Virus record (IMG/VR): IMGVR_UViG_3300042340_000379
Location: 1-64,000 of that record
DNA length: 64,000 nt
Reading direction: 5' to 3' (one strand)
The translations under genes and the position numbers were made by a program. The notes beneath the pieces were generated by a model, which made no database searches, was not told the origin of the DNA, and saw nothing but the letters and a program-made list of their open reading frames with translations. Below, piece by piece: positions 5,373 to 56,875 of this stretch (within the stretch, counting starts at the first letter, position 1; every line of letters begins with the position of its first letter).

Positions 5373-6098
5373 ATGACCTTCTCTCGCAATAATTGGGAGC
5401 CTATAATGCCAATCGACGCTAACTATCGCCGCAAAAAGGTTTTAGATTTTCTTGCCTCAATTCACACCTATATTGGCAGAGTTCCCGACTCTCCCTGCGA
5501 GCTTGAACTCCGCACAGCATTAGAATCAGAAGAAGGATTTTCCCTAGAAGAGCCCACTTCTAATATTCTTAATCTAATAGCTGACATGCATAATTCTTTC
5601 AGCATTGCCATTGGAAAAAATAACCCAATGAGTGCTCAAGAAAACCGGCTTTTAACTTGCTTAGAAAAGTTAAGCAAGCAGTTAGATGACCAAGCTATTG
5701 AAAACGATAGCCAATGGGAAAGTCGAATGCAGTCTTTGCAAACAGCCACCGAAAAGTTCACCCGCCAGGTTCCAGATCTCAATCTAACCCTGCGGGATCG
5801 CCGCAAGATGATTCTCCAGATGTGTGAGAGCGTAACCCGCAATTTACGCTACAGAAGCGGGCCGCTTGCCGTTTATGAACAAGTTATCTACGAAGAAGTG
5901 TGCCTATGGCTAACCTTTAAGCTGAGTGTCGAGAATCTGGATATACGCGACCGTACTTTAGATGTGCTTCTAAAAACAAAGGAGTGGATTAGCAACCAAA
6001 TAGCGCGGGATAACTGCCAGAATCCTGATGAATACGCAATCTATGTAAGCTCAATGGTTATTTTTAAAACCCTACAAAATTCAACCTTTGGAGGTTAA
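5373..6098 (+). CDS. hypothetical protein
   Basis: 241-aa ORF abutting the previous gene. Confidence 0.7.
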   Translation: MTFSRNNWEPIMPIDANYRRKKVLDFLASIHTYIGRVPDSPCELELRTALESEEGFSLEEPTSNILNLIADMHNSFSIAIGKNNPMSAQENRLLTCLEKLSKQLDDQAIENDSQWESRMQSLQTATEKFTRQVPDLNLTLRDRRKMILQMCESVTRNLRYRSGPLAVYEQVIYEEVCLWLTFKLSVENLDIRDRTLDVLLKTKEWISNQIARDNCQNPDEYAIYVSSMVIFKTLQNSTFGG

Positions 6099-6102
6099 CC
6101 CC

Positions 6103-6522
6103 ATGACACTAAGAAAACTAATCGGCCAGCTATCTCTAAACGAATTGAAAGAACTAACTCAAGAGCATTCTGATTGGGAGAAAAATCAATTTATTCCCCT
6201 GGATGCAAAACTGCGTAAGATAGCAAAGCAGCATTACAGCGACGATAGCGTGCTCCTGATGGAGCGTGTAGCTAATGAAGCCTATCGAACAATCGCTCTT
6301 CAATCTCTAAAAGAAAAGCCGCAGCCCTACGCGCTTATTTCCGTTGCTGAGCGGTCATATATTATTCACACCAGCCGACAAGATGAAATCCATCTGCAAG
6401 AAAAAATTAGTGCAGTGAGCGTCAAGTTCTTTGAAAGCCTGTCTTTGGCCAGACAGTTCTACTTGAGAAACTACGACAGCGGGCTGGACGAAGAGTTTGC
6501 TCAACCAAAAGGTGAAAAGTGA
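6103..6522 (+). CDS. hypothetical protein
   Basis: GGAGG RBS before ATG 6103. Confidence 0.7.
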   Translation: MTLRKLIGQLSLNELKELTQEHSDWEKNQFIPLDAKLRKIAKQHYSDDSVLLMERVANEAYRTIALQSLKEKPQPYALISVAERSYIIHTSRQDEIHLQEKISAVSVKFFESLSLARQFYLRNYDSGLDEEFAQPKGEK

Positions 6523-6623
6523 GATACATAGTTCAAATTCTCAAAACTCAACGCTAGACAGCCAGGCCCCTCCAGCCAGTCGCGGCAGTGCGCACAAGCC
6601 AGTGCTTATGATATGATTTAAAA

Positions 6624-6707
6624 GCTAGGACTACAACTTTCTTCCTTCTACTTCTATATACAACAGGCCTCGCGCCTGTATTGCCATAGAATGTTGAATT
6701 TCCTAGC
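6624..6707 (+). ncRNA. Y-RNA-like repeat unit 1
   Basis: GCTAGG-ACTA-CAACTTTC-TTCCTTC...ATA-GAATGTTG-AATTT-CCTAGC; outer and inner stems pair; internal hairpin ACAGGC/GCCTGT. Confidence 0.75.
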
Positions 6708-6713
6708 AACCTT

Positions 6714-6778
6714 TCTGGCCTAAGCGGGTCTTCCTTCAATTGAAATTTGTAACTCTAATAGACCCGCTAATTTCCAGA
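6714..6778 (+). ncRNA. Y-RNA-like repeat unit 2
   Basis: TCTGG-CCTA-AGCGGGTC-TTCCTTCA...ATA-GACCCGCT-AATTT-CCAGA; perfect 8-bp inner stem. Confidence 0.8.
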
Positions 6779-7140
6779 CCACCTCAAAAATATAAGAAGG
6801 GTCGTTTTGGATCATAGCTAAACTGTATAAGATTAAAATCTTACAGAGGCCAACCAAACAGGAATACTCAAGTGGCTTCCAGGCCTACCTTCAAAATACT
6901 CCACACCTCTTTGCCCACGTACAAGTGTCCTGATGCGTGATAAGTCGCCGCATGGCGCGATCGCCTCTCTGGCTCTGGCATAAGTGTGGAGCCCCTATAA
7001 CAGCAAGCCAAATGCTCACCAGAGCGCGAGCTGTTATAGAACCCCTCAAACAAAGGCGACCAAAAGTACCAAACGGCCTAGATTGAAAATATCTGCAAGC
7101 CAAATGCTCACTTAAGTCACCAGCGTCCCTGAGGGTTTTC

Positions 7141-7270
7141 GGGTCAGTAGCTCAGCGGTAGAGCGCCAGCATTATACACTCTCTCCAATTCCTGCTGAAG
7201 GCGGATTAGGAGAAAGTTCCTTCATTAAAATGGGAGCTGAATGTCGCAGGTTCAAATCCTGCCTGGCCCA
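7141..7270 (+). tRNA. tRNA body with a 58-nt structured insertion in the anticodon loop (tRNA-Pro(TGG)-like if spliced, or a permuted Y RNA tRNA mimic)
   Basis: Acceptor GGGTCAG/CTGGCCC+A, D arm GCTC-AGCGGTA-GAGC, anticodon stem CCAGC/GCTGA, T arm GCAGG-TTCAAAT-CCTGC; insertion at about 7173-7230. Confidence 0.85.
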
Positions 7271-7271
7271 A

Positions 7272-7292
7272 TTGGGAATCGAGGATTCCCAA
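7272..7292 (+). other. perfect hairpin immediately 3' of the interrupted tRNA (processing or termination signal?)
   Basis: TTGGGAATC-GAG-GATTCCCAA. Confidence 0.5.
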
Positions 7293-7379
7293 ACCCTCAG
7301 TATTAGTTCTTGCTATGTACAACTAAAGCCGCAAGCTTTGGCCCTTGGGCAAGTAAGAAACACCCTAATGCAAAATAAG

Positions 7380-7506
7380 GGGCAATATACTGAGGTTTGC
7401 ACATGGCTAGCCCGCCAAGGCTAGAGCGGCTGCGTAGAACGGGGTTGGCACCCAAGTGGCGTAGTCCCATTGGAGAACAGGTTAGTTTTGAGTCTACCAA
7501 TGCCCA
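7380..7506 (+). ncRNA. degenerate tRNA-like element (Gly-GCC-like) with a long structured variable region
   Basis: GGGCAAT/AATGCCC+A acceptor-like stem, CTAGCC-CGCCAA-GGCTAG arm, degenerate T arm GGTTAG-TTTTGAGT-CTACC. Confidence 0.35.
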
Positions 7507-7549
7507 TAAACAAAATCTTGGTTAGCGCCCAAGTTGAAATAAAGAGCTC

Positions 7550-7961
7550 GGGGATGATTTGGAGTTAGGCGAACAACTGACAAACCTCCAGAAAGACTCC
7601 CCCACTAAAATCCAGGGCTGGCATCCTGGTCTTAGCGACAGCCTGAGTGATTGACCGCGAGGAATCGTTGGAAAAGATCGCTATTGCTGCTAATGAATGG
7701 GGCCCCAACTTCGGGTACCCCAAGCAGCTCTCATTGAAGCACTGCATGAGCACCAGTGTAGAGAGTGTAGCTCCAGCCGGGAAGGGATTCCCAAAGACCC
7801 GGCAAATTAAATCCAAACTAAGAAAATCCCCCTTGGGATTAACCGTAACTTAGTTTGGTTTGCGCCAATCGGTTGGTGTGATCGCGGGCATCTAAAAACC
7901 AGTAAACTGAGGGGAGCAAACAAAAAGACCAGAAACTGGTTGGTACCTAGACGCTCCCCTC
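7550..7961 (+). ncRNA. candidate large structured ncRNA of unknown family
   Basis: At least 8 nested or tandem helices, no convincing ORF, located in the tRNA cluster. Confidence 0.5.
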
Positions 7962-8030
7962 TTACAAAATTCTCAAAAACTATGAAAACATACAAATCTG
8001 CCGCCTCTACGTGCAGCGGGGATGCAATAG

Positions 8031-8357
8031 ATGAATAAAATTAAAATTTATTTTTTCCCAGATTGGGTACACATCGCGCCTCCTTGGGCGATCGCACCTG
8101 CTTCAGGTGAATCTCCTGTCTATGCAAAGCTGGAGTGCAATCATGACATCGCTATCGACCTGGTCAATGGATTCGTTCACCTGAAGATCGGGTATATGAC
8201 CAGTTGTAAAGCAGGAGAGGCGCGAAGTCTGAGCAAGATGCTCGAATATGCCGCCGATATCTGTTCTGAGGCTAATCAGTATAGATATTATGTAGAGCAT
8301 CCAACACTACTGAAGGCTTACTTGCCTGATGCTGATGTGTATATTGTGGAGGAATGA
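8031..8357 (+). CDS. hypothetical protein
   Basis: 108-aa ORF, GGGG RBS-like sequence. Confidence 0.6.
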   Translation: MNKIKIYFFPDWVHIAPPWAIAPASGESPVYAKLECNHDIAIDLVNGFVHLKIGYMTSCKAGEARSLSKMLEYAADICSEANQYRYYVEHPTLLKAYLPDADVYIVEE

Positions 8358-8884
8358 TAAATGCATCATCTAGAAGAATTCATAAAACAAGGTGTGCTTC
8401 GCGCTGAGGCTGCTAACACCAAAAAGTTGACCGGGTGGCGAAAAGTTCACAAAATTAGTCTTGGGCCAATTAAGCCATCTTACTGCCTCGATTGCGGTAA
8501 ACCTAGATGTATCTGAGCCGGATCTAGAAAAACTATTAAGTTAAGGTGGTGTAACGCTCGAAGTAAAAGATCTAATAGAATATAGACGCAAGAGAGATGC
8601 TAAACTTAGAACCCTTCGTGGATTCGTCGTTGAGCGCTTATTCTAATTGAACTCAACTCAGAGAGCTGCTGATAAAGAAATTTGCAAAGACGCTAAAGAA
8701 TGGTTTAAGAATGAGTATAAAAACTGACGCTGAATATACAGCCTTTCTTGACGAAGCCTTTTTATTGCTTCAAGTCGTTAATCGAAGTGATAATGAAGAA
8801 GCTAGATTAAATGAGCTTGTAAAAGCAATTGATCAGTGGGAAGATATAGTTTTCGCTGTTCCTCAATATTAACAATCCCTTTAG

Positions 8885-8959
8885 GGGGCGGAAGCTCAGC
8901 CTGGTAGAGCAGTCGGCTTTTAACCGATTGGACGTAGGGTTCAAATCCCACCCGCCCCA
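8885..8959 (+). tRNA. tRNA-Lys(TTT), slightly atypical (A at position 8, bulged A in T stem, no encoded CCA)
   Basis: GGGGCGG/CCGCCCC+A acceptor, GTCGG-CTTTTAA-CCGAT anticodon arm, GGG-TTCAAAT-CCC T loop. Confidence 0.85.
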
Positions 8960-8962
8960 CTT

Positions 8963-9045
8963 GCCGGACTAGAAACCTCTTCCTTCAAAAACCAACCGCC
9001 CCCTCGGGGGCACCATAGAAGAAAACAGAGGTTTCACTTCCCGGC
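8963..9045 (+). ncRNA. Y-RNA-like repeat unit 3
   Basis: GCCGG-ACTA-GAAACCTC-TTCCTTCA...ACA-GAGGTTTC-ACTTC-CCGGC. Confidence 0.8.
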
Positions 9046-9175
9046 CTACACACGCAGTTAGTGACTGCAACCAAACAGAAAAACAATTGCTCTAAAAGAG
9101 AGGTAAGGATATGTAGCGAGCGTCAAGACTTTGGTCTATAAATAACACAAACTTGAAATTCTTTACCTAAAAATC

Positions 9176-9237
9176 GCCGGACTAGAGCCAACTTCCTTCA
9201 ATAACTTTGGATGTAAATAGTTGGCTCACTTCCCGGC
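9176..9237 (+). ncRNA. Y-RNA-like repeat unit 4
   Basis: GCCGG-ACTA-GAGCCAAC-TTCCTTCA...ATA-GTTGGCTC-ACTTC-CCGGC; ends 21 nt before the start codon of the 739-aa gene. Confidence 0.8.
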
Positions 9238-9258
9238 CCCTTCTCCCTAAAGGAAGCT

Positions 9259-11478
9259 ATGAAAACTGAGATCTTGTTCAATCGTCTCAAGGCAATTTCC
9301 GTTTCTACAAGCGGATTAGCCGAAACAACAAAGCTACACAAACTTATTAAACTCAACTACCTCTCAGAATTTGCCCAGCTAGGTTTCTTCTTTGAGAACG
9401 ATCATCTATTCAATGACTCTGCTCTCGAGAACTTCTCTGAAGTCATCGCCCTGGCCACCAAAATGCGCGGCGGGGATATAGAGTACGCTCCCCTCTTTTC
9501 TGGATTCCCTAATCAGGTGCCAGATCAAGATGTTTATATGCTTCAGAGATTGCTCTCAGTTTTGATGGCAATTCCTGTCTTAGACCCTGAGACTCATGGA
9601 CGAGTTTACTGTGTTCCCAATCTATTCGACCCCTCAGTGTTTGGCGCTGACCCCGTCTTTCAGATGCAGAACAAGGAACTATTTGACAACGCCGTTGCTG
9701 AGCAAAAGGCTCGGGGTCTTGATTCTGTCCATAAATGGGTAGAGCTAGAGTTTATTCCTGAGAATCTTGTTGATGAAATTCTGCAAAACTGGGTCTACAG
9801 CTGCATCTACGCAAAATCCTCTATTCAAGAGAATTGGCAGGCTGACATTGCCTGGCTGTTAGCTTACTTCCCCACTATTGGGAAGCCCATGCAATTCGAC
9901 AATTCTCGGATTGTTCACCGCGAAAACAAAACCTTTCTCACCAAGCACTTTTGGGAGAATTGCCTTTACTCTCAAGCAATTCATCTAATGAGTTCAGCTA
10001 CTGACTGCTTGCGCTTGTTTGCGGCCTTAACCGGCAGCGACATTTCCCTAGCAGAGAAGATTAAATTCCCCAAGCTCAGCAGGGCCCAACGGAAAATCAT
10101 CCTATCTGTTCTAGAACGCAAGGAAGCCCAGACGATCGCGGAAGAGCTGAATATCTACAAAGATCTCTGGCTCGAACTCGGGCGGTATATTCACCCTACC
10201 GAGTATCGTCGTCAATACCCCAAAACGGCTGAGGCGTTTAATCTACTTCGGAATGGAAAAGTCGAAACGTTTAATGGGAAAGTGCAAAGCCTTCTAAAGA
10301 ATGGTCATTATCTTTTAGCCTCAGCCTTGCTGGCAAAGAAGCCTGGCCTATTCGCTCGACATATCGTTGACCTGATGCGTAAAGCAACAGAAGAAGAAGG
10401 CCAATTGATCGCTGGTCTTTTTGGAACCGTAGCTGACCAGGTGCCCGTCAAGACGCTGATGACTATTCACTCTTACGTGATGGGTCTAAAAGCAAGCGAA
10501 AAAACAGCGGTCATTATTAAGAATGGCAAAATTCAGGTTCTTGACCGACCTTCAGTTCTTCCGTTCTCAAAAAGGGATAATTTGATGGAGGCCCTTGACA
10601 AAGGCCTAACCCAGCTATCTGACAAAGAAACCTGGGAAGATAAATCCATCTATTTTGACGAACGCCTACGCAAATATGTACTGCCACTTTCTGAAAGGAA
10701 ATTGTCAGATAGCATGTTGCCAATGGCTCGTGGCACTAGGGTTAAAGTCAAAGGCCCAGTTGTACGCTTGTTCGCGTACTGGAAAGAAGAAGGTGAAAGA
10801 ACTGACCTTGACCTTTCCATTCTCATGTTGGATGACAAATTCAACGCTCTGAGCCATGTGTCCTACACAAATCTGAGAGAAGGCAAAGTTGTTCACTCAG
10901 GTGATGTCCAATCCGCGCCTTATGGTGCTGTCGAGTTCATTGACATCCCTCTAAGCTACGACTGCAGCAAACTTCTCCCTTCTTATGTCAAGAAAGAGAG
11001 CAAAGTACGCTACGTCGCAGTTGAAATCCACCGATACGCAGGGCATAAGTTTAGTGAAATGCCTCAAGCATTCACTGGCTGGATGGAGCGCGAGGAAGTT
11101 AACAACGACCGCGCCAGCTTCGACCCCAAAACTGTAGCTAACAAGTTACAGCTCACGGGTGGTGCTCAATACAGCATTCCAATCATTTTCGACCTTCTAA
11201 CCCAAGAAATGATTTACACCGATCTCTACGTGAGCGGGAATAAAGCAGGGTTTAACCGGGTTGAGGATGCAGCGGATAATGTCTGTCTGATCGCTGAACA
11301 GATAGCTAGATTTGTGGAAGTCAAGCCCACGTTCTATGATTTGTTATCCATCAATATCACCCATCGAGGTGGTACTTTGGTTGATGACATAGAGGACGCG
11401 GATATTGTGTTCGGCGTTAGTCCTAGTGCTGACTACGGGCCTTTTCAAGTTGGACGGGTTCTTAGCGAGCTGCTATAA
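9259..11478 (+). CDS. Helical-repeat (putative Ro60/TROVE-like) + C-terminal TerD-like domain protein (MXAN_6230/SCO0854-type)
   Basis: AAGGAAG RBS; N-terminal PLFSGFP..VP and FGADP; ATDCLR, HP.EY and KPGLFAR helical region; TerD-like DLDLS...HSGDVQSAP..A.EFID. Confidence 0.7.
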   Translation: MKTEILFNRLKAISVSTSGLAETTKLHKLIKLNYLSEFAQLGFFFENDHLFNDSALENFSEVIALATKMRGGDIEYAPLFSGFPNQVPDQDVYMLQRLLSVLMAIPVLDPETHGRVYCVPNLFDPSVFGADPVFQMQNKELFDNAVAEQKARGLDSVHKWVELEFIPENLVDEILQNWVYSCIYAKSSIQENWQADIAWLLAYFPTIGKPMQFDNSRIVHRENKTFLTKHFWENCLYSQAIHLMSSATDCLRLFAALTGSDISLAEKIKFPKLSRAQRKIILSVLERKEAQTIAEELNIYKDLWLELGRYIHPTEYRRQYPKTAEAFNLLRNGKVETFNGKVQSLLKNGHYLLASALLAKKPGLFARHIVDLMRKATEEEGQLIAGLFGTVADQVPVKTLMTIHSYVMGLKASEKTAVIIKNGKIQVLDRPSVLPFSKRDNLMEALDKGLTQLSDKETWEDKSIYFDERLRKYVLPLSERKLSDSMLPMARGTRVKVKGPVVRLFAYWKEEGERTDLDLSILMLDDKFNALSHVSYTNLREGKVVHSGDVQSAPYGAVEFIDIPLSYDCSKLLPSYVKKESKVRYVAVEIHRYAGHKFSEMPQAFTGWMEREEVNNDRASFDPKTVANKLQLTGGAQYSIPIIFDLLTQEMIYTDLYVSGNKAGFNRVEDAADNVCLIAEQIARFVEVKPTFYDLLSINITHRGGTLVDDIEDADIVFGVSPSADYGPFQVGRVLSELL

Positions 11479-11515
11479 TTAGGCAGTCATTGTAGACTCC
11501 TTGATTTGGTAGTTT

Positions 11516-11551
11516 AGGGCTGGCTGCATAAGCTGGCCCTCTTTATTTTTT
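11516..11551 (+). terminator. intrinsic terminator
   Basis: AGGGCTGGCT...AGCTGGCCCT hairpin followed by a T-rich tract. Confidence 0.65.
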
Positions 11552-11562
11552 AGGAGATAGGA

Positions 11563-11799
11563 ATGGTTGTATTACTTATGAGCTTTAATATGCATAAAGT
11601 AACAAAGCTATTCGTCAGGAACAAGAAGACAGGAGAGTTTTAAGACATCAGCTATTGATATGAGTGGGGAAAAGAAAACATCAGATTAAGGTGGCATCTC
11701 CTAAACCATGCCTCTCTAGAGACTCAAGTTGAGGGTGTCATGTCCGAGAACCAAAAACGGGCAACCCAAATCGCGCAGTTAACTCAAATCTTTCAGTAG
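11563..11799 (+). pseudogene. small gene with two in-frame stops
   Basis: AGGAGA RBS; the frame stays protein-like through a TAA and a TGA to the terminal TAG at 11797-11799. Confidence 0.45.
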
Positions 11800-11819
11800 T
11801 TTACCAAAGGATAATCATT

Positions 11820-13975
11820 ATGCTTACCGCAGAATTCCGCCCTGGCACATTGGTTATCCTTTCTGGGGCCCCTGGTTCTGGTAAAAGCAGCCTAGCCGCT
11901 CAATACCCAGAGCATGTTGTTAGTTCAGACAATTTGCGAGCTACCTTCTTTGGCTATCAAAATGAGCTGATTGAAGAGCGCCCCACGTTCTATCTCTACG
12001 GAGTTGATTCGAGGGCATCTGAACGACCCAGAAATCTTGACGATGGATTTATCTTTGAAACCCTAGAAAAGATTGTCGATGTCCGTATGAAAAACGGGAT
12101 GACGACAATTGTAGATGCCACCAGCCCAACTGACACCGATCGCCACAAGTTCGCGAAGATTGCAGAAAAGTACGGTCGGCCCGTACTAATTTGCATCATG
12201 GATGTACCTAAGGAAACTCTCTACAAACGAAACGCCAGTAGAAAGTTCCCGGTTAGCAATAGCGTAGTTGATCGATTTGTAGACAAACTAGAGCTGACCA
12301 GCCATTGGCCCTACATCTTAAATCCTGAGTTACTAAACGTTAACTACTGGACAATCCAAGCTGATCAGCCCCTAGACATTATTGGGGATATTCATGGCTG
12401 CGTTGAGGTCATTAACTTAGTAGAACGGTTAGGTTATATGCATGGAGTTCACCCACAAGGGCGCAAACTTCTCTTCCTAGGAGATATGGTGGATCGCGGC
12501 CCCCATTCCTTAAAAGTTCTTGAGTTTGTTATGGGTTTAGTGAGCCAAGGACACTACTGTGTTCTTGCCAACCATGAAGCCAATCTGCTTAAAGGTCTAA
12601 AAGGTGAAGAAGTACGATCGCACGCAACCCGCCGCACTCTCCATGAAGTTCTGTTATCTGGTAAACAAAAAGAGATCCAAAAGTTTATCGAAGAGCGCCC
12701 CCCGTTCTATCTTTATGGAGTAGACACGTTAATCTGCCATGCAGACACAACAAGCTTCTTCTACAAATCTACACTCAAAGAAGCCGTTTATGGCACTTCT
12801 ACCCTAAGTCGAGCAGTAGATAGCGATGCAATATTCGCCGCGCATTACCCTAACCGCAGGTTAATTCGAGGTCATATTGCTGCAACTAGCCCTCAGCACA
12901 ACGTTTTTGCGCTAGAAGAAGGAGCAGGATATAGCGCGGGCTTTATAGTAGCCTGTCGAGCAAGCATTGGCGGAAACTCTCTAGAGTTCTTCCGCGAGCC
13001 CACCACGTTTGTGTACAAAGATCTTCCAAAGACTTTTGAGCAACGGATGGAGCCTCTAGTCAAGACTAAATTGGTAAATGTGGATAAGTGCGGCCCGCTC
13101 AAACTGTTTAAGTACAGCAGCAAGGCATTTTACAATCCTGAAACGTTTGCTGAAAATCCTGACTTAGGCCTCGCTCGAACTGTAGTAACAGGTTTAGATG
13201 GAGAGCCCATCGGGAGTACCTTTCCTAAAATCTACAACTATGGAGAAAAAGAAGCGCCTGAAATTGACCTTAACGAAGAAATCATCTGGGTTGAAAAGCT
13301 CAATGGATTCTTCGCGCAGGTTTTTCTTGACCCTTACTCTGTAAAGCCTAAGCTTATATACACCTCTTCAGGAAAGTTTACTGGAGAGTTTGCTGAAATG
13401 GCTCGCCAGAATATCCAGCAGTATTCTGGCGCTATTATTCGACTCTTCAAAACTTCAGACGTTAAAAACCTAATGTTTGAAATTGTTGACGCCAGAGACC
13501 CCCATATTGTGGATTACTCAGAAGAAGAGTATGGTGCCTATCTAATTGGAGCCGGATATAAAATGGGCTAGCTAGTGAGCATGTTCTAGACTACATGTCT
13601 CTTTCACTTGATGAGCTGCGCCGTCCATACCGCGGTCGCGCCACGTATAGGGAGGTACTAGAGAAAACAAAAGCATGTGATCGTGAAGGGTACATGGTTC
13701 GCAGTTTAACTGGAGAGCATCTCGTTAAACTGAAGTCTCCTACCTACCTAGCGATTAAATTCATCTCACGCATGAGCAATGAGAGCGACACCGTGATGTT
13801 CCGCAATCCAACTGTCACCAAGCAGAAGATTCGCGCTCGGGGGCTAGAAGAGCTACAATTCGTTGTAGATATAATAGTTGAACAGCTTACTGAGGAAGCA
13901 TGGAAAGCCATGAACTCAATCGAGCGGCGAGACTACCTTATTCCCCTAGTTAAGAGTGAGTATGCTTATGCTTGA
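11820..13975 (+). CDS. Polynucleotide kinase - metallophosphatase - RNA ligase (Pnkp/Rnl1-like RNA repair enzyme), with a frameshift at about 13560
   Basis: GAPGSGKS, VVSSD..R and IVDAT kinase motifs; IGDIHG, GDMVDRG and ANHE phosphatase motifs; ligase motif I EKLNG, FEIV, then REGYMV and VKLKS in the second frame (13595..13975). Confidence 0.85.
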
Positions 13976-53774: not shown

Positions 53775-54021
53775 TGTTGAACTTCTAATGAGTGGGCAAA
53801 AAGTCCAGAAAACCCTTCAAGAGATTGAAGAGAAAGGTGAGGGACTAAAAGAACAACAAGCTAAACTCATCAATGAGTACCAAGAGCTTCAAATTCAACA
53901 CACCCACGCAAAAGGGAAACTTGAGATGTTCCTCCAAATGATCACAGATTTATATACTCTGCCTGAAGGGGCAGTCGTAAACATGACAGATGGAACCATT
54001 CAATACCCAACCGATTCTTAA
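53698..54021 (+). CDS. coiled-coil hypothetical protein
   Basis: Bridges recA and polA; start uncertain. Confidence 0.5.
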   Translation: MIDVSPAESQSESSPQQEETKVSQISVELLMSGQKVQKTLQEIEEKGEGLKEQQAKLINEYQELQIQHTHAKGKLEMFLQMITDLYTLPEGAVVNMTDGTIQYPTDS

Positions 54022-55372
54022 ATACATTAAAACGGAGCGCTCATTCTTACGAGCTGTTGAAGAAGTATCTTTAATGTCAAAAACCTTGGCTTTAGATACT
54101 GAAACGGGGCTTAGAAAAGAGTGGGCGCACGTTGGAGAAGAAGGGAGGCTAAATCCGCACACAGGGAATGTCTCCCTTTTAACTCTAAAAGAAGAAACCG
54201 GCACGCCCTACGTGTTTGACTTCTTCGCTCTGAGAGCTAAAGGAATTGATCTTGAGCCTCTCCACCAAGAGCTAAAGAAAAAAGTTCTAATCGCGCATAA
54301 GGCAACATTCGATGGAAAAATGCTTGTTGGTGAGTTTGGCCGCAACGATTTAACGTGGTGGTGTACGCTAACTGGCGACCAACTTCTTTCTAATGCCACA
54401 GGTTCAAAGTTTGGTATGGCCCGAGGTCACCGACTAATTGACTGCGTGCGAGATTTCCTAGGTGTTATTCTCACAGGAAAGGGAACGCTCCAGAGAGACA
54501 ACTGGGATTTAGAACTTGAGTCGCGCACGCTTAAAAATCCTCATTGGATTGAAATGCTCAAGTACGCGGCTGACGATACTCTCTATCTTTTCCCGCTAAA
54601 AAATCTCTATGAGAAAGTCCTAGTCAGCCCACTTCCATCATCTATGTTTAACAAACATAATCGACCGGATGAAGAGTGCGGGTTTGGTATGAAGAAAGCG
54701 GTCGAGATAGAAATGGAATTTATCAATCCCACTATCGAGATGGAGTATTATGGGTTTCCTGCTGCGCCTTCTCTAATAGAAGCCCTTCAGCTAGCTAATG
54801 ATGACAGCCGTTTAGATTCAGCCTGCGACCTAGCTGAGCAGTTAGGTATTCCCCTAGACTATGACCCAATCCTGGGGGATATCCCATTCGACAGGACAAT
54901 GAAAGTCTTCAATAACCCTAAAAGGATTACAGAGTTATTGCAGGAAGTTGGGGTGATTGTTGGGGATGCCCAGAAAGCAACGCTTATGCGCGTTCAAAGC
55001 ATCTACGACCAGGTTAGCAGCAACCAGGGAGAAGACGATCCAGACCCTCTTGCATTTATCAATGAAGAAGAAGAAGAGCAGTATAGGCAAGTTATGGAGT
55101 TTGAAAACTCCCTGCTAGTTAAAGGCTCTTTAATTCTTCAGACTCTTCTAAAATATAAACAGAAGAGTAAGCAGAAGGGTATGAGCATGCTGCCGTACAT
55201 CAACCCAGCCAGCGGCTGCGTCCATCCTAACGTTTCGGCCTGCCGCGCAAGCACCGGCAGAGTCGCCATGGCCAGGCCAAACTTGCAGCAGATTAGTAAT
55301 CTTAATGCTTATCCACAAGAGATTGAGTTTAGAAACGGTTCAATGCAGTATTTATCAGCGTGCAAGCTGTGA
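53990..55372 (+). CDS. polA: family A DNA polymerase, N-terminal part (3'-5' exonuclease + thumb)
   Basis: ExoI LDTETG, ExoII AHKATFD, ExoIII YAADD; STGR....PNLQQI. Confidence 0.9.
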   Translation: MEPFNTQPILKYIKTERSFLRAVEEVSLMSKTLALDTETGLRKEWAHVGEEGRLNPHTGNVSLLTLKEETGTPYVFDFFALRAKGIDLEPLHQELKKKVLIAHKATFDGKMLVGEFGRNDLTWWCTLTGDQLLSNATGSKFGMARGHRLIDCVRDFLGVILTGKGTLQRDNWDLELESRTLKNPHWIEMLKYAADDTLYLFPLKNLYEKVLVSPLPSSMFNKHNRPDEECGFGMKKAVEIEMEFINPTIEMEYYGFPAAPSLIEALQLANDDSRLDSACDLAEQLGIPLDYDPILGDIPFDRTMKVFNNPKRITELLQEVGVIVGDAQKATLMRVQSIYDQVSSNQGEDDPDPLAFINEEEEEQYRQVMEFENSLLVKGSLILQTLLKYKQKSKQKGMSMLPYINPASGCVHPNVSACRASTGRVAMARPNLQQISNLNAYPQEIEFRNGSMQYLSACKL

Positions 55373-55876: not shown

Positions 55877-56875
55877 ATGCAGCTAGCCCAAGATACTTAC
55901 GAGGTTAGCGAGCAGGGCGTAATCCTCGGGCCAGATGACAATATAGTTGTCGCAAAATACCTAGTAAAAATTGGCCCTAAGAATATATTTCTATGTCCTG
56001 AAGGGTGGCTGTTCACCGGCTTAGATTACTCCAGTCAAGAACTTATGATTGGCGCGGTCTGGTCTGGTGATCCTAAAATGCTTCAGGCTTATACAGAGCC
56101 TGAGTTTGTAGACCACCCAGAGACGGGCGAAAAGATTGCCAACCCCCTTGCTGACCTTCATACAATTACAACTAAGGAAGCATGCTTCCCAGGAATTTTC
56201 ACAGACAAAGATTGGTATGAATGGATTCCCACCGCTAAAACCAAAGGGCTAATCCAATTCCCGCATGAACCTCGGCACTACGGGAAAATTACTAACTTTA
56301 CTCTCATCTATGGTGGGACAGCTATGTCTCTATCTGTCACCCTGGCTCTTCCCGAAACGTTATGCAATGACATTATAAAAGGCCACAAAAAGACTTACGC
56401 TGCGTATCATAATTGGGCGGCTGAGAATGCTGCTGTTGGTGCCGCGACAGGATGGATCAGTACTCCTTGGGGTACTAGAGTTCGAGCTGTAAATGAAACA
56501 AACGCAAAAGGCGGCGGTTCAGCTGAGTTAATGGCCGTAAACGTCGCGATCCAAGGCACTGGAGCAGACATCTGCAAAGAAGCCATGAACAGAATATGGA
56601 AGTGGAAAGAGAAGTATAATTATCCAGTTAGGCTGGCCGGTCAGGTGCATGATGAGATTGTACCTATTGTCGCAGGAAACGCTAAGCTAGACCTAGACAA
56701 ATGCAAATGGGACGGAGATGTCATTATCACTCCCAAATGGATAGTCGATGGGCCAATCTTAGAGTTAGCACCTCAAATTCGCCAAATCATGATTGACGTT
56801 GAGACAGAATGTTTTGACAGTCGTCTTGCAGGGCGAGTTGATTATCCTGACCCAAGCCCATTCTGGAAAAAGTAG
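55877..56875 (+). CDS. polA: family A DNA polymerase, C-terminal part (palm/fingers)
   Basis: Motif A DYSSQEL, motif B R..GK..NF..IYG, NVAIQGTGAD, motif C VHDEI. Confidence 0.92.
   Translation: MQLAQDTYEVSEQGVILGPDDNIVVAKYLVKIGPKNIFLCPEGWLFTGLDYSSQELMIGAVWSGDPKMLQAYTEPEFVDHPETGEKIANPLADLHTITTKEACFPGIFTDKDWYEWIPTAKTKGLIQFPHEPRHYGKITNFTLIYGGTAMSLSVTLALPETLCNDIIKGHKKTYAAYHNWAAENAAVGAATGWISTPWGTRVRAVNETNAKGGGSAELMAVNVAIQGTGADICKEAMNRIWKWKEKYNYPVRLAGQVHDEIVPIVAGNAKLDLDKCKWDGDVIITPKWIVDGPILELAPQIRQIMIDVETECFDSRLAGRVDYPDPSPFWKK

What the first reader, a model, noticed from the sequence alone, without database searches (positions are those of the whole stretch)
6624..13975. Candidate phage RNA-repair RNP system: Y-RNA-like ncRNA array + Ro/TROVE-like-TerD protein + PNK/phosphatase/ligase + tRNAs
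Seen: four dispersed units (6624-6707, 6714-6778, 8963-9045, 9176-9237) share the architecture [outer stem ending GG]-(A/C)CTA-[8-bp inner stem]-TTCCTTC-[variable loop]-A(T/C)A-[inner stem']-A(A/C)TT(T/C)-[CC outer stem']. The inner stems differ in sequence but stay paired (CAACTTTC/GAATGTTG, AGCGGGTC/GACCCGCT, GAAACCTC/GAGGTTTC, GAGCCAAC/GTTGGCTC). That is covariation, so the selected feature is RNA structure. The last unit lies 21 nt upstream of a 739-aa helical + TerD-like gene, which is followed by a Pnkp-like kinase-phosphatase-ligase. Established: Ro60/Rsr binds Y RNAs through a terminal stem with an internal loop followed by a pyrimidine-rich tract; bacterial Y RNAs mimic tRNA and cluster with RNA-repair genes; phage PNK/Rnl1 repairs tRNA-Lys cut by host anticodon nucleases such as PrrC. 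Inference: this is a phage-encoded, multi-RNA, Ro-like complex with a non-canonical partner (TerD instead of vWA) that delivers or protects tRNAs for repair as a counter-defence.
Basis: partly seen in the sequence, partly recalled or inferred. Interest (0 to 1): 0.92.

Follow-up and report, generated by a model that had tools for sequence, protein, structure and literature searches.

The report
Y-RNA-like RNAs with non-Ro partner

Summary
Four units (6624-6707, 6714-6778, 8963-9045, 9176-9237) share one fold: outer stem ending GG, CUA-type bulge, covarying 9-bp inner stem, invariant CUUCCUUC. They are the only four matches in 64 kb to a covariance model built mostly from other genomes.

The "tRNA" at 7141-7270 is a circular permutation of the long form of this RNA, set in a tRNA scaffold.

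The same RNA lies next to homologues of the 739-aa protein in about 60 bacterial loci from many phyla and about 40 of 77 phage loci. Every hit is on the gene's strand. Long forms carry a T arm, acceptor hairpin and D arm, which is the YrlA/Y-RNA topology.

The protein is not Ro60/TROVE: no Pfam hit, hhalign probability 1%, no Foldseek match. It has a helical N-terminal part, a TerD-like beta-sandwich and a small C-terminal domain.

The context is RNA repair. In the phage this is tRNA-Lys(UUU) plus a Pnkp-like kinase-phosphatase-ligase. In Bacteroidota it is a divergent WYL regulator, the gene, the RNAs, then RtcB (plus RlaP and an exonuclease in Fulvivirga).

Best reading: a Ro/Y-RNA-like particle with a non-homologous protein. 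Binding and function are inferred, not shown.

The parts
6624..6707 (+). Unit U1: short-form Y-like RNA with an extra GC hairpin in the loop
   Evidence: R1 45.8 bits, E 1.5e-10, not in the training set. Fold z = -4.2.
6714..6778 (+). Unit U2: minimal short-form Y-like RNA, tandem to U1
   Evidence: R1 55.1 bits, E 3e-13. Fold z = -4.1.
7141..7270 (+). Fifth unit: tRNA-topology (circularly permuted) long form. It has a normal acceptor stem, D arm and T arm. The anticodon loop is replaced by inner stem (ACUCUCUCC / GGAGAAAGU), AAUU and AUUA bulges, a capped CC..GG stem and UCCUUC.
   Evidence: Rfam tRNA 54.7 bits with a 60-nt insert, while ARAGORN finds no tRNA here. The half-motif GGNYTR-N9-TCCTTC occurs 5 times in the window against 0.11 expected, and one copy is at 7203-7223. 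The repeat finder groups 7200-7229 with U1, U3 and U4. The permuted sequence aligns over its full length to the 23 long units and matches 43 of 46 conserved columns.
8885..8960 (+). tRNA-Lys(UUU), 2 nt upstream of U3
   Evidence: ARAGORN. Rfam tRNA 59.8 bits.
8963..9045 (+). Unit U3: short-form Y-like RNA with a GC hairpin in the loop
   Evidence: R1 50.4 bits, E 7e-12, not in the training set. Fold z = -4.6.
9176..9237 (+). Unit U4: minimal short-form Y-like RNA, 21 nt before the ATG
   Evidence: R1 61.3 bits, E 5e-15. Fold z = -4.8.
9259..11478 (+). 739-aa partner protein: mixed alpha/beta start (about residues 1-170), helical repeats (about 170-455), TerD-like beta-sandwich (about 494-660), small C-terminal alpha/beta domain
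   Evidence: AF2 pLDDT 88, pTM 0.85. About 720-aa homologues, some named 'TerD family protein'. 2,514 clusters at 50% identity. phrog_33734, function unknown. NF041916 at 279 bits, below its cut-off. No TROVE.
11516..11550 (+). Intrinsic-terminator-like hairpin after the 739-aa gene
   Evidence: 10-bp stem with 6 GC pairs, followed by a T run.
11820..13571 (+). Pnkp-like protein: P-loop polynucleotide kinase (11-158), metallophosphatase (about 186-400), N-terminal half of an Rnl1-like ligase domain with a KLNG motif (422-578)
   Evidence: Pfam AAA_33 and Metallophos. PDB 4j6o and 4gp6, which I take from memory to be Clostridium thermocellum Pnkp domains. TIGR04075 at 137 bits. phrog_562 positions 30-184. 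KLNG motif read from the translation.
13595..13975 (+). 126-aa ORF in another frame: continuation of the Rnl1-like ligase domain
   Evidence: phrog_562 positions 215-327 of 377, E 2e-9. In L037 the matches to both pieces lie in one frame.

Best explanation
The five units are small non-coding RNAs of a Y-RNA-like family. Each has a protein-binding module: a terminal stem ending G-G/C-C, an asymmetric internal loop (NYUR opposite NNUUY), a 9-bp helix of free sequence, and an invariant single-stranded CUUCCUUC. The loop is variable. It can be minimal, hold a T arm only, or hold a full tRNA-like body (V, T arm, acceptor hairpin, D arm).

I infer that the adjacent ~720-aa helical plus TerD-like protein binds the conserved module and forms an RNP analogous to Ro60/Y RNA, without being homologous to it. 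I further infer that the RNP works in tRNA/RNA damage handling. The tRNA-like body would present a tRNA shape to tRNA-acting enzymes, either tethering repair enzymes or competing with nucleases. The protein would act as scaffold.

In this phage the RNAs lie in a short tRNA region and are probably cut out along with tRNA-Lys. The cassette sits directly upstream of a healing-and-sealing enzyme (kinase, phosphatase, ligase). This fits protection or repair of tRNAs, plausibly tRNA-Lys(UUU), cut by host anticodon nucleases.

Shown: RNA structure and covariation, tight strand-specific co-occurrence with the protein family, the tRNA-like module, the RNA-repair neighbourhood, and absence of TROVE homology.

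Inferred: direct binding, expression as discrete RNAs, the repair or counter-defence role.
For: RNA structure
- Covariation score 0.94 against 0.21 for shuffles.
- RNAalifold on an unbiased MAFFT alignment of 23 long units gives five helices, with 23 of 28 pairs compensated.

Co-occurrence with the protein family
- R1 gives 108 hits in 71 loci holding homologues. All are on the gene's strand, nearly all within about 1 kb of the gene (one lies about 1.8 kb downstream, just past RtcB in L003). They lie downstream in most phyla and upstream in the Actinoplanes-type loci.
- R2 gives 106 of 106 hits on the gene strand in those same loci, the window and six phage loci (largely the same units), and 82 of 82 in 77 further phage loci, with full-length hits in about 40 of these.
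- Distant phage homologues at about 25% identity (Weasels2, RcXuper) still have the RNA beside the gene. In Weasels2 the loop motif has drifted to UACUUC.

Specificity
- R1 finds no other hit in the 64-kb window.
- It finds none in 50 kb of the Ro60-encoding phage Bxz1.
- It hits only 3 of 80 viral loci fetched by a loose motif scan. One of the three has the gene directly after the units.

Modularity
- The Ro-linked YrlA-like RNA of Bxz1 shares the tRNA-like module (R2 41 bits). It lacks the stem module.

RNA-repair context
- The window has the Pnkp-like enzyme.
- Ten loci have a WYL-WCX regulator gene next to the system (upstream and divergent in nine), and five have RtcB after the RNAs.
- Fulvivirga L005 adds an RNase T-family exonuclease, RtcB and two RlaP genes.
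- Weasels2 has RtcB 3 kb downstream, and RcXuper has RlaP next to the gene.
- This mirrors Salmonella rtcR / rsr-yrlBA-rtcBA (PMC7790460).

Phage tRNA arrays
- The units are interleaved with tRNA genes in L138 and L090.
Against: - There is no direct evidence of binding or of discrete transcripts.
- No promoter-like excess was seen around the units.
- Apart from the RNAs, no protein neighbour is conserved across all loci. RNA-repair genes are present in only a minority, so the repair link may be clade-specific.
- TerD domains are otherwise known from Ter stress-resistance systems, not from RNA binding.
- The protein gives no match to any known RNA-binding fold.
- The ligase domain here is split by a frame change and may be inactive.
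Confidence: 0.62

Rival explanations
1. The units are cis-acting elements of the partner gene's own transcript (5' or 3' UTR). They would control its translation or stability, for example by autoregulatory binding sites or by the CUUCCUU loop pairing with the gene's ribosome-binding site, and would not be free-standing RNAs.
For: The units are always on the gene's strand and directly flank it. In the window U4 ends 21 nt before the ATG. The sequence AAGGAAG at 9250-9256, just before the ATG, is the exact complement of CUUCCUU.
Against: Arrays of up to 7 units, including full tRNA-like bodies, are excessive for a UTR switch. The units lie upstream in some clades and downstream in others. In phages they are interleaved with tRNA genes kilobases from the gene, and U1 and U2 lie 2.5 kb upstream of it. 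The loop motif is invariant in Bacteroidota as well, a phylum in which Shine-Dalgarno pairing is little used (my own knowledge).
Confidence: 0.1
2. The RNAs act on their own as tRNA decoys or competitive inhibitors of tRNA-cleaving or tRNA-modifying enzymes. The protein would only stabilise or process them, or would be an enzyme that uses them as substrate, and there would be no Ro-like scaffold RNP.
For: The tRNA-like module is very close to a real tRNA. A decoy role has been proposed for YrlA (PMC7790460). The window version keeps true tRNA ends.
Against: Most units (about 60-90 of about 110) have no tRNA-like part, yet they keep the stem module and the invariant CUUCCUUC. So the conserved and shared function lies in the module that tracks the protein, not in tRNA mimicry.
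Confidence: 0.13
3. One reading: the 739-aa protein is a divergent Ro60/TROVE orthologue whose vWA domain has been replaced by TerD.
For: It has a helical-repeat N-terminal part and a C-terminal domain with conserved acidic motifs typical of TerD metal sites. It is adjacent to Y-like RNAs and RNA-repair genes, as rsr is.
Against: No TROVE hit in any of 33 homologues at E <= 1. hhalign of the family against a Ro60 alignment gives probability 1% over 19 columns. Foldseek of the full model and of the N-terminal model gives no Ro60 among the 50 matches listed for each, and the best E-values are 0.014 and 0.12. The RNA lacks the Ro-binding motif GNCGAAN0-1G described in PMC4201824.
Confidence: 0.04
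4. The protein is an ordinary Ter-type stress or tellurite-resistance component, and its adjacency to the RNAs has no functional meaning.
For: NCBI and JGI name homologues 'TerD family protein' or 'stress response protein SCP2'. A jumbo-phage survey read stand-alone phage TerD genes as Ter-system parts (PMC7824862).
Against: No other Ter genes were found among the conserved neighbours. The RNA-gene pairing holds across many phyla and phages and down to about 25% protein identity. The TerD Pfam model matches only 7 of 33 members, and weakly.
Confidence: 0.02

Closest known systems
Bacterial Ro60 (Rsr) / Y RNA particles, especially Salmonella rsr-yrlBA-rtcBA and mycobacteriophage Ro with YrlA
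   Same: One large protein gene is flanked on the same strand by one to several small RNAs. Some of these carry a T arm, acceptor hairpin and D arm between the strands of a terminal stem. Both are frequently linked to RtcB and other RNA-repair genes, with a divergent ligand-sensing regulator. Both occur in large phages beside tRNA genes.
   Different: The protein is not homologous: no TROVE, no vWA, hhalign 1%. The RNA's protein-binding module is different (GG / NYUR / 9 bp / CUUCCUUC instead of GNCGAAN0-1G). The regulator is WYL-WCX rather than RtcR (CARF plus sigma-54 activator). Arrays are often larger, and most units lack the tRNA-like part.
Rfam YrlA (RF02553)
   Same: The long units align end to end with the model, including terminal stem, T arm, acceptor hairpin and D arm (40.9 bits, E 1e-7 in a 451-nt search).
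   Different: The score is below the gathering score of 69. The internal YrlA helix is not matched. Ten loci and the window give no hit at gathering threshold. Short units have no Rfam match at all.
Bacterial Pnkp (Clostridium thermocellum Pnkp/Hen1 RNA repair) and T4 Pnk + Rnl1
   Same: The 583-aa ORF has the kinase - metallophosphatase - ligase order of Pnkp, and its ligase part resembles Rnl1. The nearby tRNA-Lys(UUU) is the classic PrrC target (my own knowledge).
   Different: It scores 137 bits against a TIGR04075 cut-off of 750. No Hen1 was found. The ligase domain is split between two frames. The enzyme is not a conserved neighbour of the RNA-protein pair.
NCBIfam NF041916, MXAN_6230/SCO0854 family RING domain-containing protein
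   Same: Residues 334-701 align to profile positions 385-751 of 842 (E 7e-83), so the C-terminal two thirds are related.
   Different: The score of 279 bits is below the cut-off of 600. No RING region was matched. No paper mentions that family.

Membership tests
Ro60 / Rsr (TROVE + vWA) | TROVE domain (Pfam PF05731) detectable by sequence | tested here: not met
   No Pfam hit for the window protein. No TROVE in 33 homologues at E <= 1. hhalign of A1 against the Ro60 alignment A7 gives probability 1%. True Ro60 proteins all carry PF05731 and PF25045.
Ro60 / Rsr (TROVE + vWA) | C-terminal vWA domain (Ro60's carries a MIDAS site; my own knowledge) | tested here: not met
   The C-terminal part is a TerD-like beta-sandwich followed by a small alpha/beta domain. 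No match to the second Pfam domain that all the Ro60 proteins carry (PF25045).
Ro60 / Rsr (TROVE + vWA) | Ring-shaped HEAT-repeat fold similar to solved Ro60 structures | tested here: not met
   Foldseek against the PDB with the full model (pLDDT 88) and the N-terminal model (pLDDT 83) gives best E-values of 0.014 and 0.12, to exportins and adaptor-type repeats. No Ro60 is among the 50 matches listed for each. Caveat: Foldseek is weak on helical repeats.
Ro60 / Rsr (TROVE + vWA) | Encoded next to Y RNAs on the same strand, often with RtcB | tested here: met
   This is a functional analogy and does not show homology.
YrlA RNA (Rfam RF02553) | Score at or above the family's gathering threshold (69 bits) | tested here: not met
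   Best score 40.9 bits in L005. No hit in the window or in 10 loci at gathering threshold.
YrlA RNA (Rfam RF02553) | tRNA-like domain in the order V, T arm, acceptor hairpin, D arm, enclosed by a terminal stem | tested here: met
   23 long units, with 23 of 28 pairs compensated. About 37 full-length R2 hits. In the window it is present only in permuted form at 7141-7270.
YrlA RNA (Rfam RF02553) | Ro-binding motif GNCGAAN0-1G near the 5' end (PMC4201824) | tested here: not met
   That position holds GG-NYUR-N9-CUUCCUUC in all units. R1 finds nothing beside the Ro gene of Bxz1.
TerD domain (Pfam PF02342) | Match to the TerD profile, and a beta-sandwich with acidic metal-binding motifs | tested here: inconclusive
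   The window protein has no hit at E <= 0.01. Seven of 33 homologues hit weakly, best E 1e-6. Sources name homologues TerD family. AF2 shows an all-beta region at 494-660. Invariant D516, D518, S520, S547-G548-D549, E559 and D562 resemble TerD metal sites as I recall them.
Bacterial Pnkp (TIGR04075) | Kinase + metallophosphatase + ligase in one chain, scoring above the equivalog cut-off (750 bits) | tested here: not met
   All three parts are recognisable. The score is 137 bits, and the ligase domain is split over two ORFs in different frames. It is Pnkp-like, not an equivalog.
tRNA | Cloverleaf with a 7-nt anticodon loop | tested here: met
   8885-8960 is tRNA-Lys(UUU). 7141-7270 has the acceptor, D and T arms but a 60-nt insert in place of the anticodon loop, and ARAGORN does not call it. 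It is tRNA-like and unlikely to be a decoding tRNA.

The most novel reading that the evidence does not exclude
A second, evolutionarily independent Y-RNA-type ribonucleoprotein exists and is widespread in bacteria and large phages. It would consist of a ~720-aa helical + TerD-like protein family (about 2,500 clusters at 50% identity) that specifically binds a GG/NYUR/helix/CUUCCUUC module carried by modular RNAs with or without a tRNA-like body, and it would serve as the scaffold of RtcB- or Pnkp-based RNA repair. This phage would further show that the RNA tolerates circular permutation into a genuine tRNA scaffold, so the active object is a tRNA whose anticodon arm is the protein handle.
Probability: 0.55. 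Interest if true: 0.88.

Novelty: new variant of a known kind. Interest (0 to 1): 0.82.

Why it matters
What bacterial Ro60/Y-RNA particles do is still unsettled. One open point is why some Y RNAs mimic tRNA.

A non-homologous protein family that has converged on the same kind of RNA partner, in the same repair operons and the same phage tRNA regions, gives an independent system in which to ask that question. It also argues that the tRNA-like RNA, rather than the Ro ring, is the conserved functional core.

It would assign a function to a large family now labelled "TerD family" or "hypothetical". It would add an RNA family missing from Rfam. It would also offer cultured hosts for experiments: Fulvivirga, Rapidithrix, Acanthopleuribacter, Stieleria, Actinoplanes, Paenibacillus, and the isolated phages Weasels2 and RcXuper.

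The permuted tRNA-embedded unit is a natural experiment on which ends and which surfaces matter.

Tried and rejected
- Rfam at gathering and at E <= 10 over 6300-9400 gave only the two tRNA hits and noise.
- MAFFT on the four window units misregistered the 3' half by one column, so I built the model from 37 geometry-matched units instead.
- A permissive stem descriptor gave 534 mostly false hits and was abandoned.
- PDB sequence searches with the protein and with its family profile found nothing.
- Foldseek with two models found nothing.
- Looking for the window's other proteins next to the homologues showed that Pnkp is not a conserved neighbour. Only L037 has it.
- Reading 7141-7270 as a tRNA-Ile(UAU) with a spliceable intron was considered and rejected. 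The 'UAUA' is the family's conserved linker before the inner 3' strand, and the whole insert aligns to the family after permutation.
- A search for further permuted units in 267 sources found none.
- Literature searches linking TerD with Y RNA, YrlA, tRNA-like RNAs or RtcB, and for SCO0854, found nothing relevant.
- Burroughs & Aravind 2016 and the 2020 Ro60 review could not be read here, so prior description there cannot be excluded.
- The 2026 preprint on three tRNA-mimic families concerns other RNAs.
- The promoter scan was uninformative.


Full report
**1. The observation**

- an outer stem of 5-6 bp ending G-G/C-C;
- a 4-nt bulge (ACUA or CCUA);
- a 9-bp inner helix whose sequence differs in every unit but stays paired;
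- the invariant CUUCCUUC, with CU closing the helix and UCCUUC opening the loop;
- a variable loop;
- the inner 3' strand;
- a 5-nt bulge (AAUUU or ACUUC);
- the outer 3' strand.

Each unit folds far better than its shuffles, with z = -4.1 to -4.8. Rfam has no family for them.

**2. The same RNA elsewhere**

The 739-aa ORF (9259-11478) has no Pfam domain. It does have ~720-aa homologues at 28-42% identity in many phyla, some named "TerD family protein".

I fetched 71 genomic loci that encode a relative. They come from Bacteroidota, Myxococcota, Cyanobacteria, Planctomycetota, Actinomycetota, Vulcanimicrobiota, Gracilibacteria and others.

A simple scan asked only for TCCTTC preceded by a strand that pairs downstream. 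It found the same element right next to the gene in nearly every locus. The hits also carried the flanking GG-NYUR and NNUUU-CC, which the scan had not required.

Thirty-seven short units with identical geometry align cleanly. On that alignment:
- 99.6% of cells pair;
- 10 of 14 pairs change on both sides;
- the covariation score is 0.94, against 0.21 for shuffles and at most 0.20 for slid partners.

Pairing was a selection criterion, so the percentage paired is partly circular. The conserved unpaired motifs and the location next to the gene are not.

*Model R1.* Built from this alignment, R1 finds exactly four hits in the window and nothing else up to E = 10. The four include U1 and U3, which were not used to build it. 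In the 71 loci (792 kb) it finds 108 hits. All are on the gene's strand, and nearly all lie within about 1 kb of the gene; one lies just past RtcB in L003. They lie downstream in most phyla and upstream in Actinoplanes and a few others.

**3. Long forms and the link to Y RNAs**

Many units in other genomes have about 100 nt between the inner-helix strands. Twenty-three of them align well.

RNAalifold predicts five helices on that alignment: outer stem, inner stem, a 5-bp T arm with a GUUCGAAUC loop, a 6-bp acceptor-like hairpin, and a D arm (GUAGCUCAGU.GGUAGAGC). Twenty-three of 28 pairs show compensatory change.

This order (V, T, acceptor hairpin, D) inside a terminal stem is the YrlA architecture described by Chen et al. 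2014 (PMC4201824). Rfam YrlA aligns end to end with one such unit at 40.9 bits. That is below its gathering score of 69, and its internal helix is not matched.

*Model R2.* Built from the long units, R2 finds about 37 full-length long forms. All 106 of its hits are on the gene strand.

**4. A fifth unit in the window**

Rfam calls a tRNA at 7141-7270 with a 60-nt insert in the anticodon loop. ARAGORN does not call it.

The half-motif GGNYTR-N9-TCCTTC occurs five times in 64 kb, against 0.11 expected. Four copies are U1-U4 and the fifth is at 7203-7223, inside that insert. There the 9-mer GGAGAAAGU pairs with ACUCUCUCC (7178-7186). That strand is followed by AAUU-CC, a short capped stem, and GG-AUUA.

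Read in tRNA order, this is the family's module turned inside out. I cut the sequence in the cap and joined the acceptor ends. The result aligns over its whole length to the 23 long units and matches 43 of 46 columns conserved at 80% or more. The independent repeat finder also groups 7200-7229 with U1, U3 and U4.

So the phage has a circularly permuted long form with true tRNA ends. None was found in the other 260-odd sources.

**5. The protein**

AF2 gives a confident model, pLDDT 88 and pTM 0.85. It has a mixed alpha/beta start, about 14 helices (170-455), a beta-sandwich (494-660) and a small C-terminal domain.

Tests for a Ro60 relationship were all negative:
- The TerD Pfam model matches 7 of 33 homologues weakly, and TROVE matches none.
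- Foldseek against the PDB finds nothing below E = 0.01 with either the full or the N-terminal model. No Ro60 is among the 50 matches listed for each.
- A profile of the family finds nothing among PDB sequences.
- hhalign against an alignment of true Ro60 proteins, seeded from mycobacteriophage Bxz1 gp220, gives probability 1%.

The protein is therefore not a Ro60/TROVE member.

It is related to NCBIfam NF041916 (RING_SCO0854) below the cut-off and to phrog_33734 of unknown function. A profile of the N-terminal part finds 2,514 clusters at 50% identity, and nearly all of the 150 listed are 650-780 aa long. Many Arg residues are invariant. This is compatible with RNA binding but does not prove it.

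**6. Context**

*The window is phage.* It encodes tail and baseplate proteins, DNA polymerase A, clamp loader, a RecA/UvsX-like protein and an HNH endonuclease. It is the first 64 kb of a 208-kb IMG/VR contig.

*Downstream of the partner gene.* After a terminator comes a 583-aa protein with a P-loop kinase, a metallophosphatase and the first half of an Rnl1-like ligase domain with a KLNG motif. The second half of that ligase domain is in the next ORF, in another frame.

*Bacterial neighbours.* No protein neighbour is conserved across all bacterial loci. In Bacteroidota, however, the layout is: divergent WYL-WCX regulator, the gene, the RNA array, then RtcB. In Fulvivirga the operon continues with an RNase T-family exonuclease, RtcB and two RlaP nucleotidyltransferases. 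This parallels Salmonella rtcR / rsr-yrlBA-rtcBA (PMC7790460).

*Phages.*
- Distant homologues sit in tRNA clusters near RtcB (Weasels2) or RlaP (RcXuper).
- They still have R1- or R2-type RNAs beside them, with the loop motif drifted to UACUUC in Weasels2.
- In 77 IMG/VR loci encoding relatives, R2 finds 82 hits. All are on the gene strand, most just upstream, in about 40 loci.
- In L138 and L090 the units are interleaved with up to 18 tRNA genes.

**7. Controls**

R1 finds nothing in 50 kb of Bxz1. R2 finds the Ro-linked YrlA-like RNA 160 nt upstream of the Ro gene through its tRNA-like module only. So the tRNA-like body is shared between the two systems, and the stem module tracks the protein partner.

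A loose motif scan of IMG/VR returned mostly chance hits. R1 confirmed three loci. One of them has the gene directly after the units. The other two are short slices of long contigs.

**8. Interpretation**

The most economical reading is an RNP analogous to Ro60/Y RNA, built with a non-homologous protein and acting in tRNA/RNA damage handling. In the phage it is combined with tRNA-Lys(UUU) and a healing-and-sealing enzyme. Binding, expression and function are inferences.

Four rivals are scored in their own section of this report, with the evidence for and against each: cis-regulatory UTR elements, free-standing decoys, a divergent Ro60, and an ordinary Ter-system protein.

**9. Novelty**

Rfam 15 has no family for these RNAs. 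PHROGs and NCBI give the protein no function. Text searches found no paper linking TerD proteins with Y or tRNA-like RNAs or with RtcB.

One relevant comparative-genomics paper (Burroughs & Aravind 2016) could not be read here. As I recall its abstract, it names Rot/TROVE and SPFH/Band-7 scaffolds with cognate RNAs, not TerD.

I rate the finding as a new variant of a known kind, with high interest.

Noticed in passing
window 11820-13571 and 13595-13975: The Rnl1-like ligase domain is split. Residues 422-578 of the 583-aa ORF match phrog_562 positions 30-184. The next ORF, in a different frame 24 nt later, matches positions 215-327. In L037 the matches to both pieces lie in one frame. This could be a real split, a frameshift or an assembly error.
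   Followed up: partly
window 6997-7019 and 7089-7111: A 23-nt direct repeat (…GCAAGCCAAATGCTCAC, 91% identical) lies in the ORF-poor stretch between U2 and the tRNA-like unit. Its function is unknown.
   Followed up: no
window 6851-6867 and 9068-9084: A 17-nt repeat, CAACCAAACAG(G/A)AA(T/A)AC, lies 73 nt after U2 and 23 nt after U3. It could be a processing or promoter-type signal tied to the units.
   Followed up: no
window 9250-9256: The sequence AAGGAAG just before the ATG of the 739-aa gene is the exact complement of the units' invariant CUUCCUU. It may be coincidence or a regulatory pairing.
   Followed up: no
L034 and L037: Standard-code translation of the homologue (L034) and of the Pnkp-like neighbour (L037) contains many stop codons (19 and 9). 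L034 is Gracilibacteria, so this is probably an alternative genetic code. Both loci still carry the RNA units.
   Followed up: partly
L003:9810-9939: A further full-length long-form unit lies after RtcB (R2 95.9 bits), so the RNA array brackets the ligase gene in this Cyclobacteriaceae genome.
   Followed up: no
L187:23744-23882 (Mycobacterium phage Bxz1): The YrlA-like RNA upstream of Ro gp220 is found by my model R2 (41 bits) but is not reported by Rfam at its gathering threshold. The Rfam YrlA threshold therefore misses at least one Ro-linked member.
   Followed up: partly
window 53990-55372 and 55877-56875: DNA polymerase A appears as two ORFs: a 3'-5' exonuclease plus the start of the polymerase, then the polymerase core. 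About 500 nt lie between them.
   Followed up: no
L138:822-6382 and L090:1202-3585: These phage contigs have tRNA arrays of 18 and 10 genes. Y-like units are inserted a few nucleotides from tRNA ends, for example a unit at 5870-5951 followed by tRNA-Ile at 5956. This suggests co-transcription and release by the tRNA-processing enzymes.
   Followed up: partly
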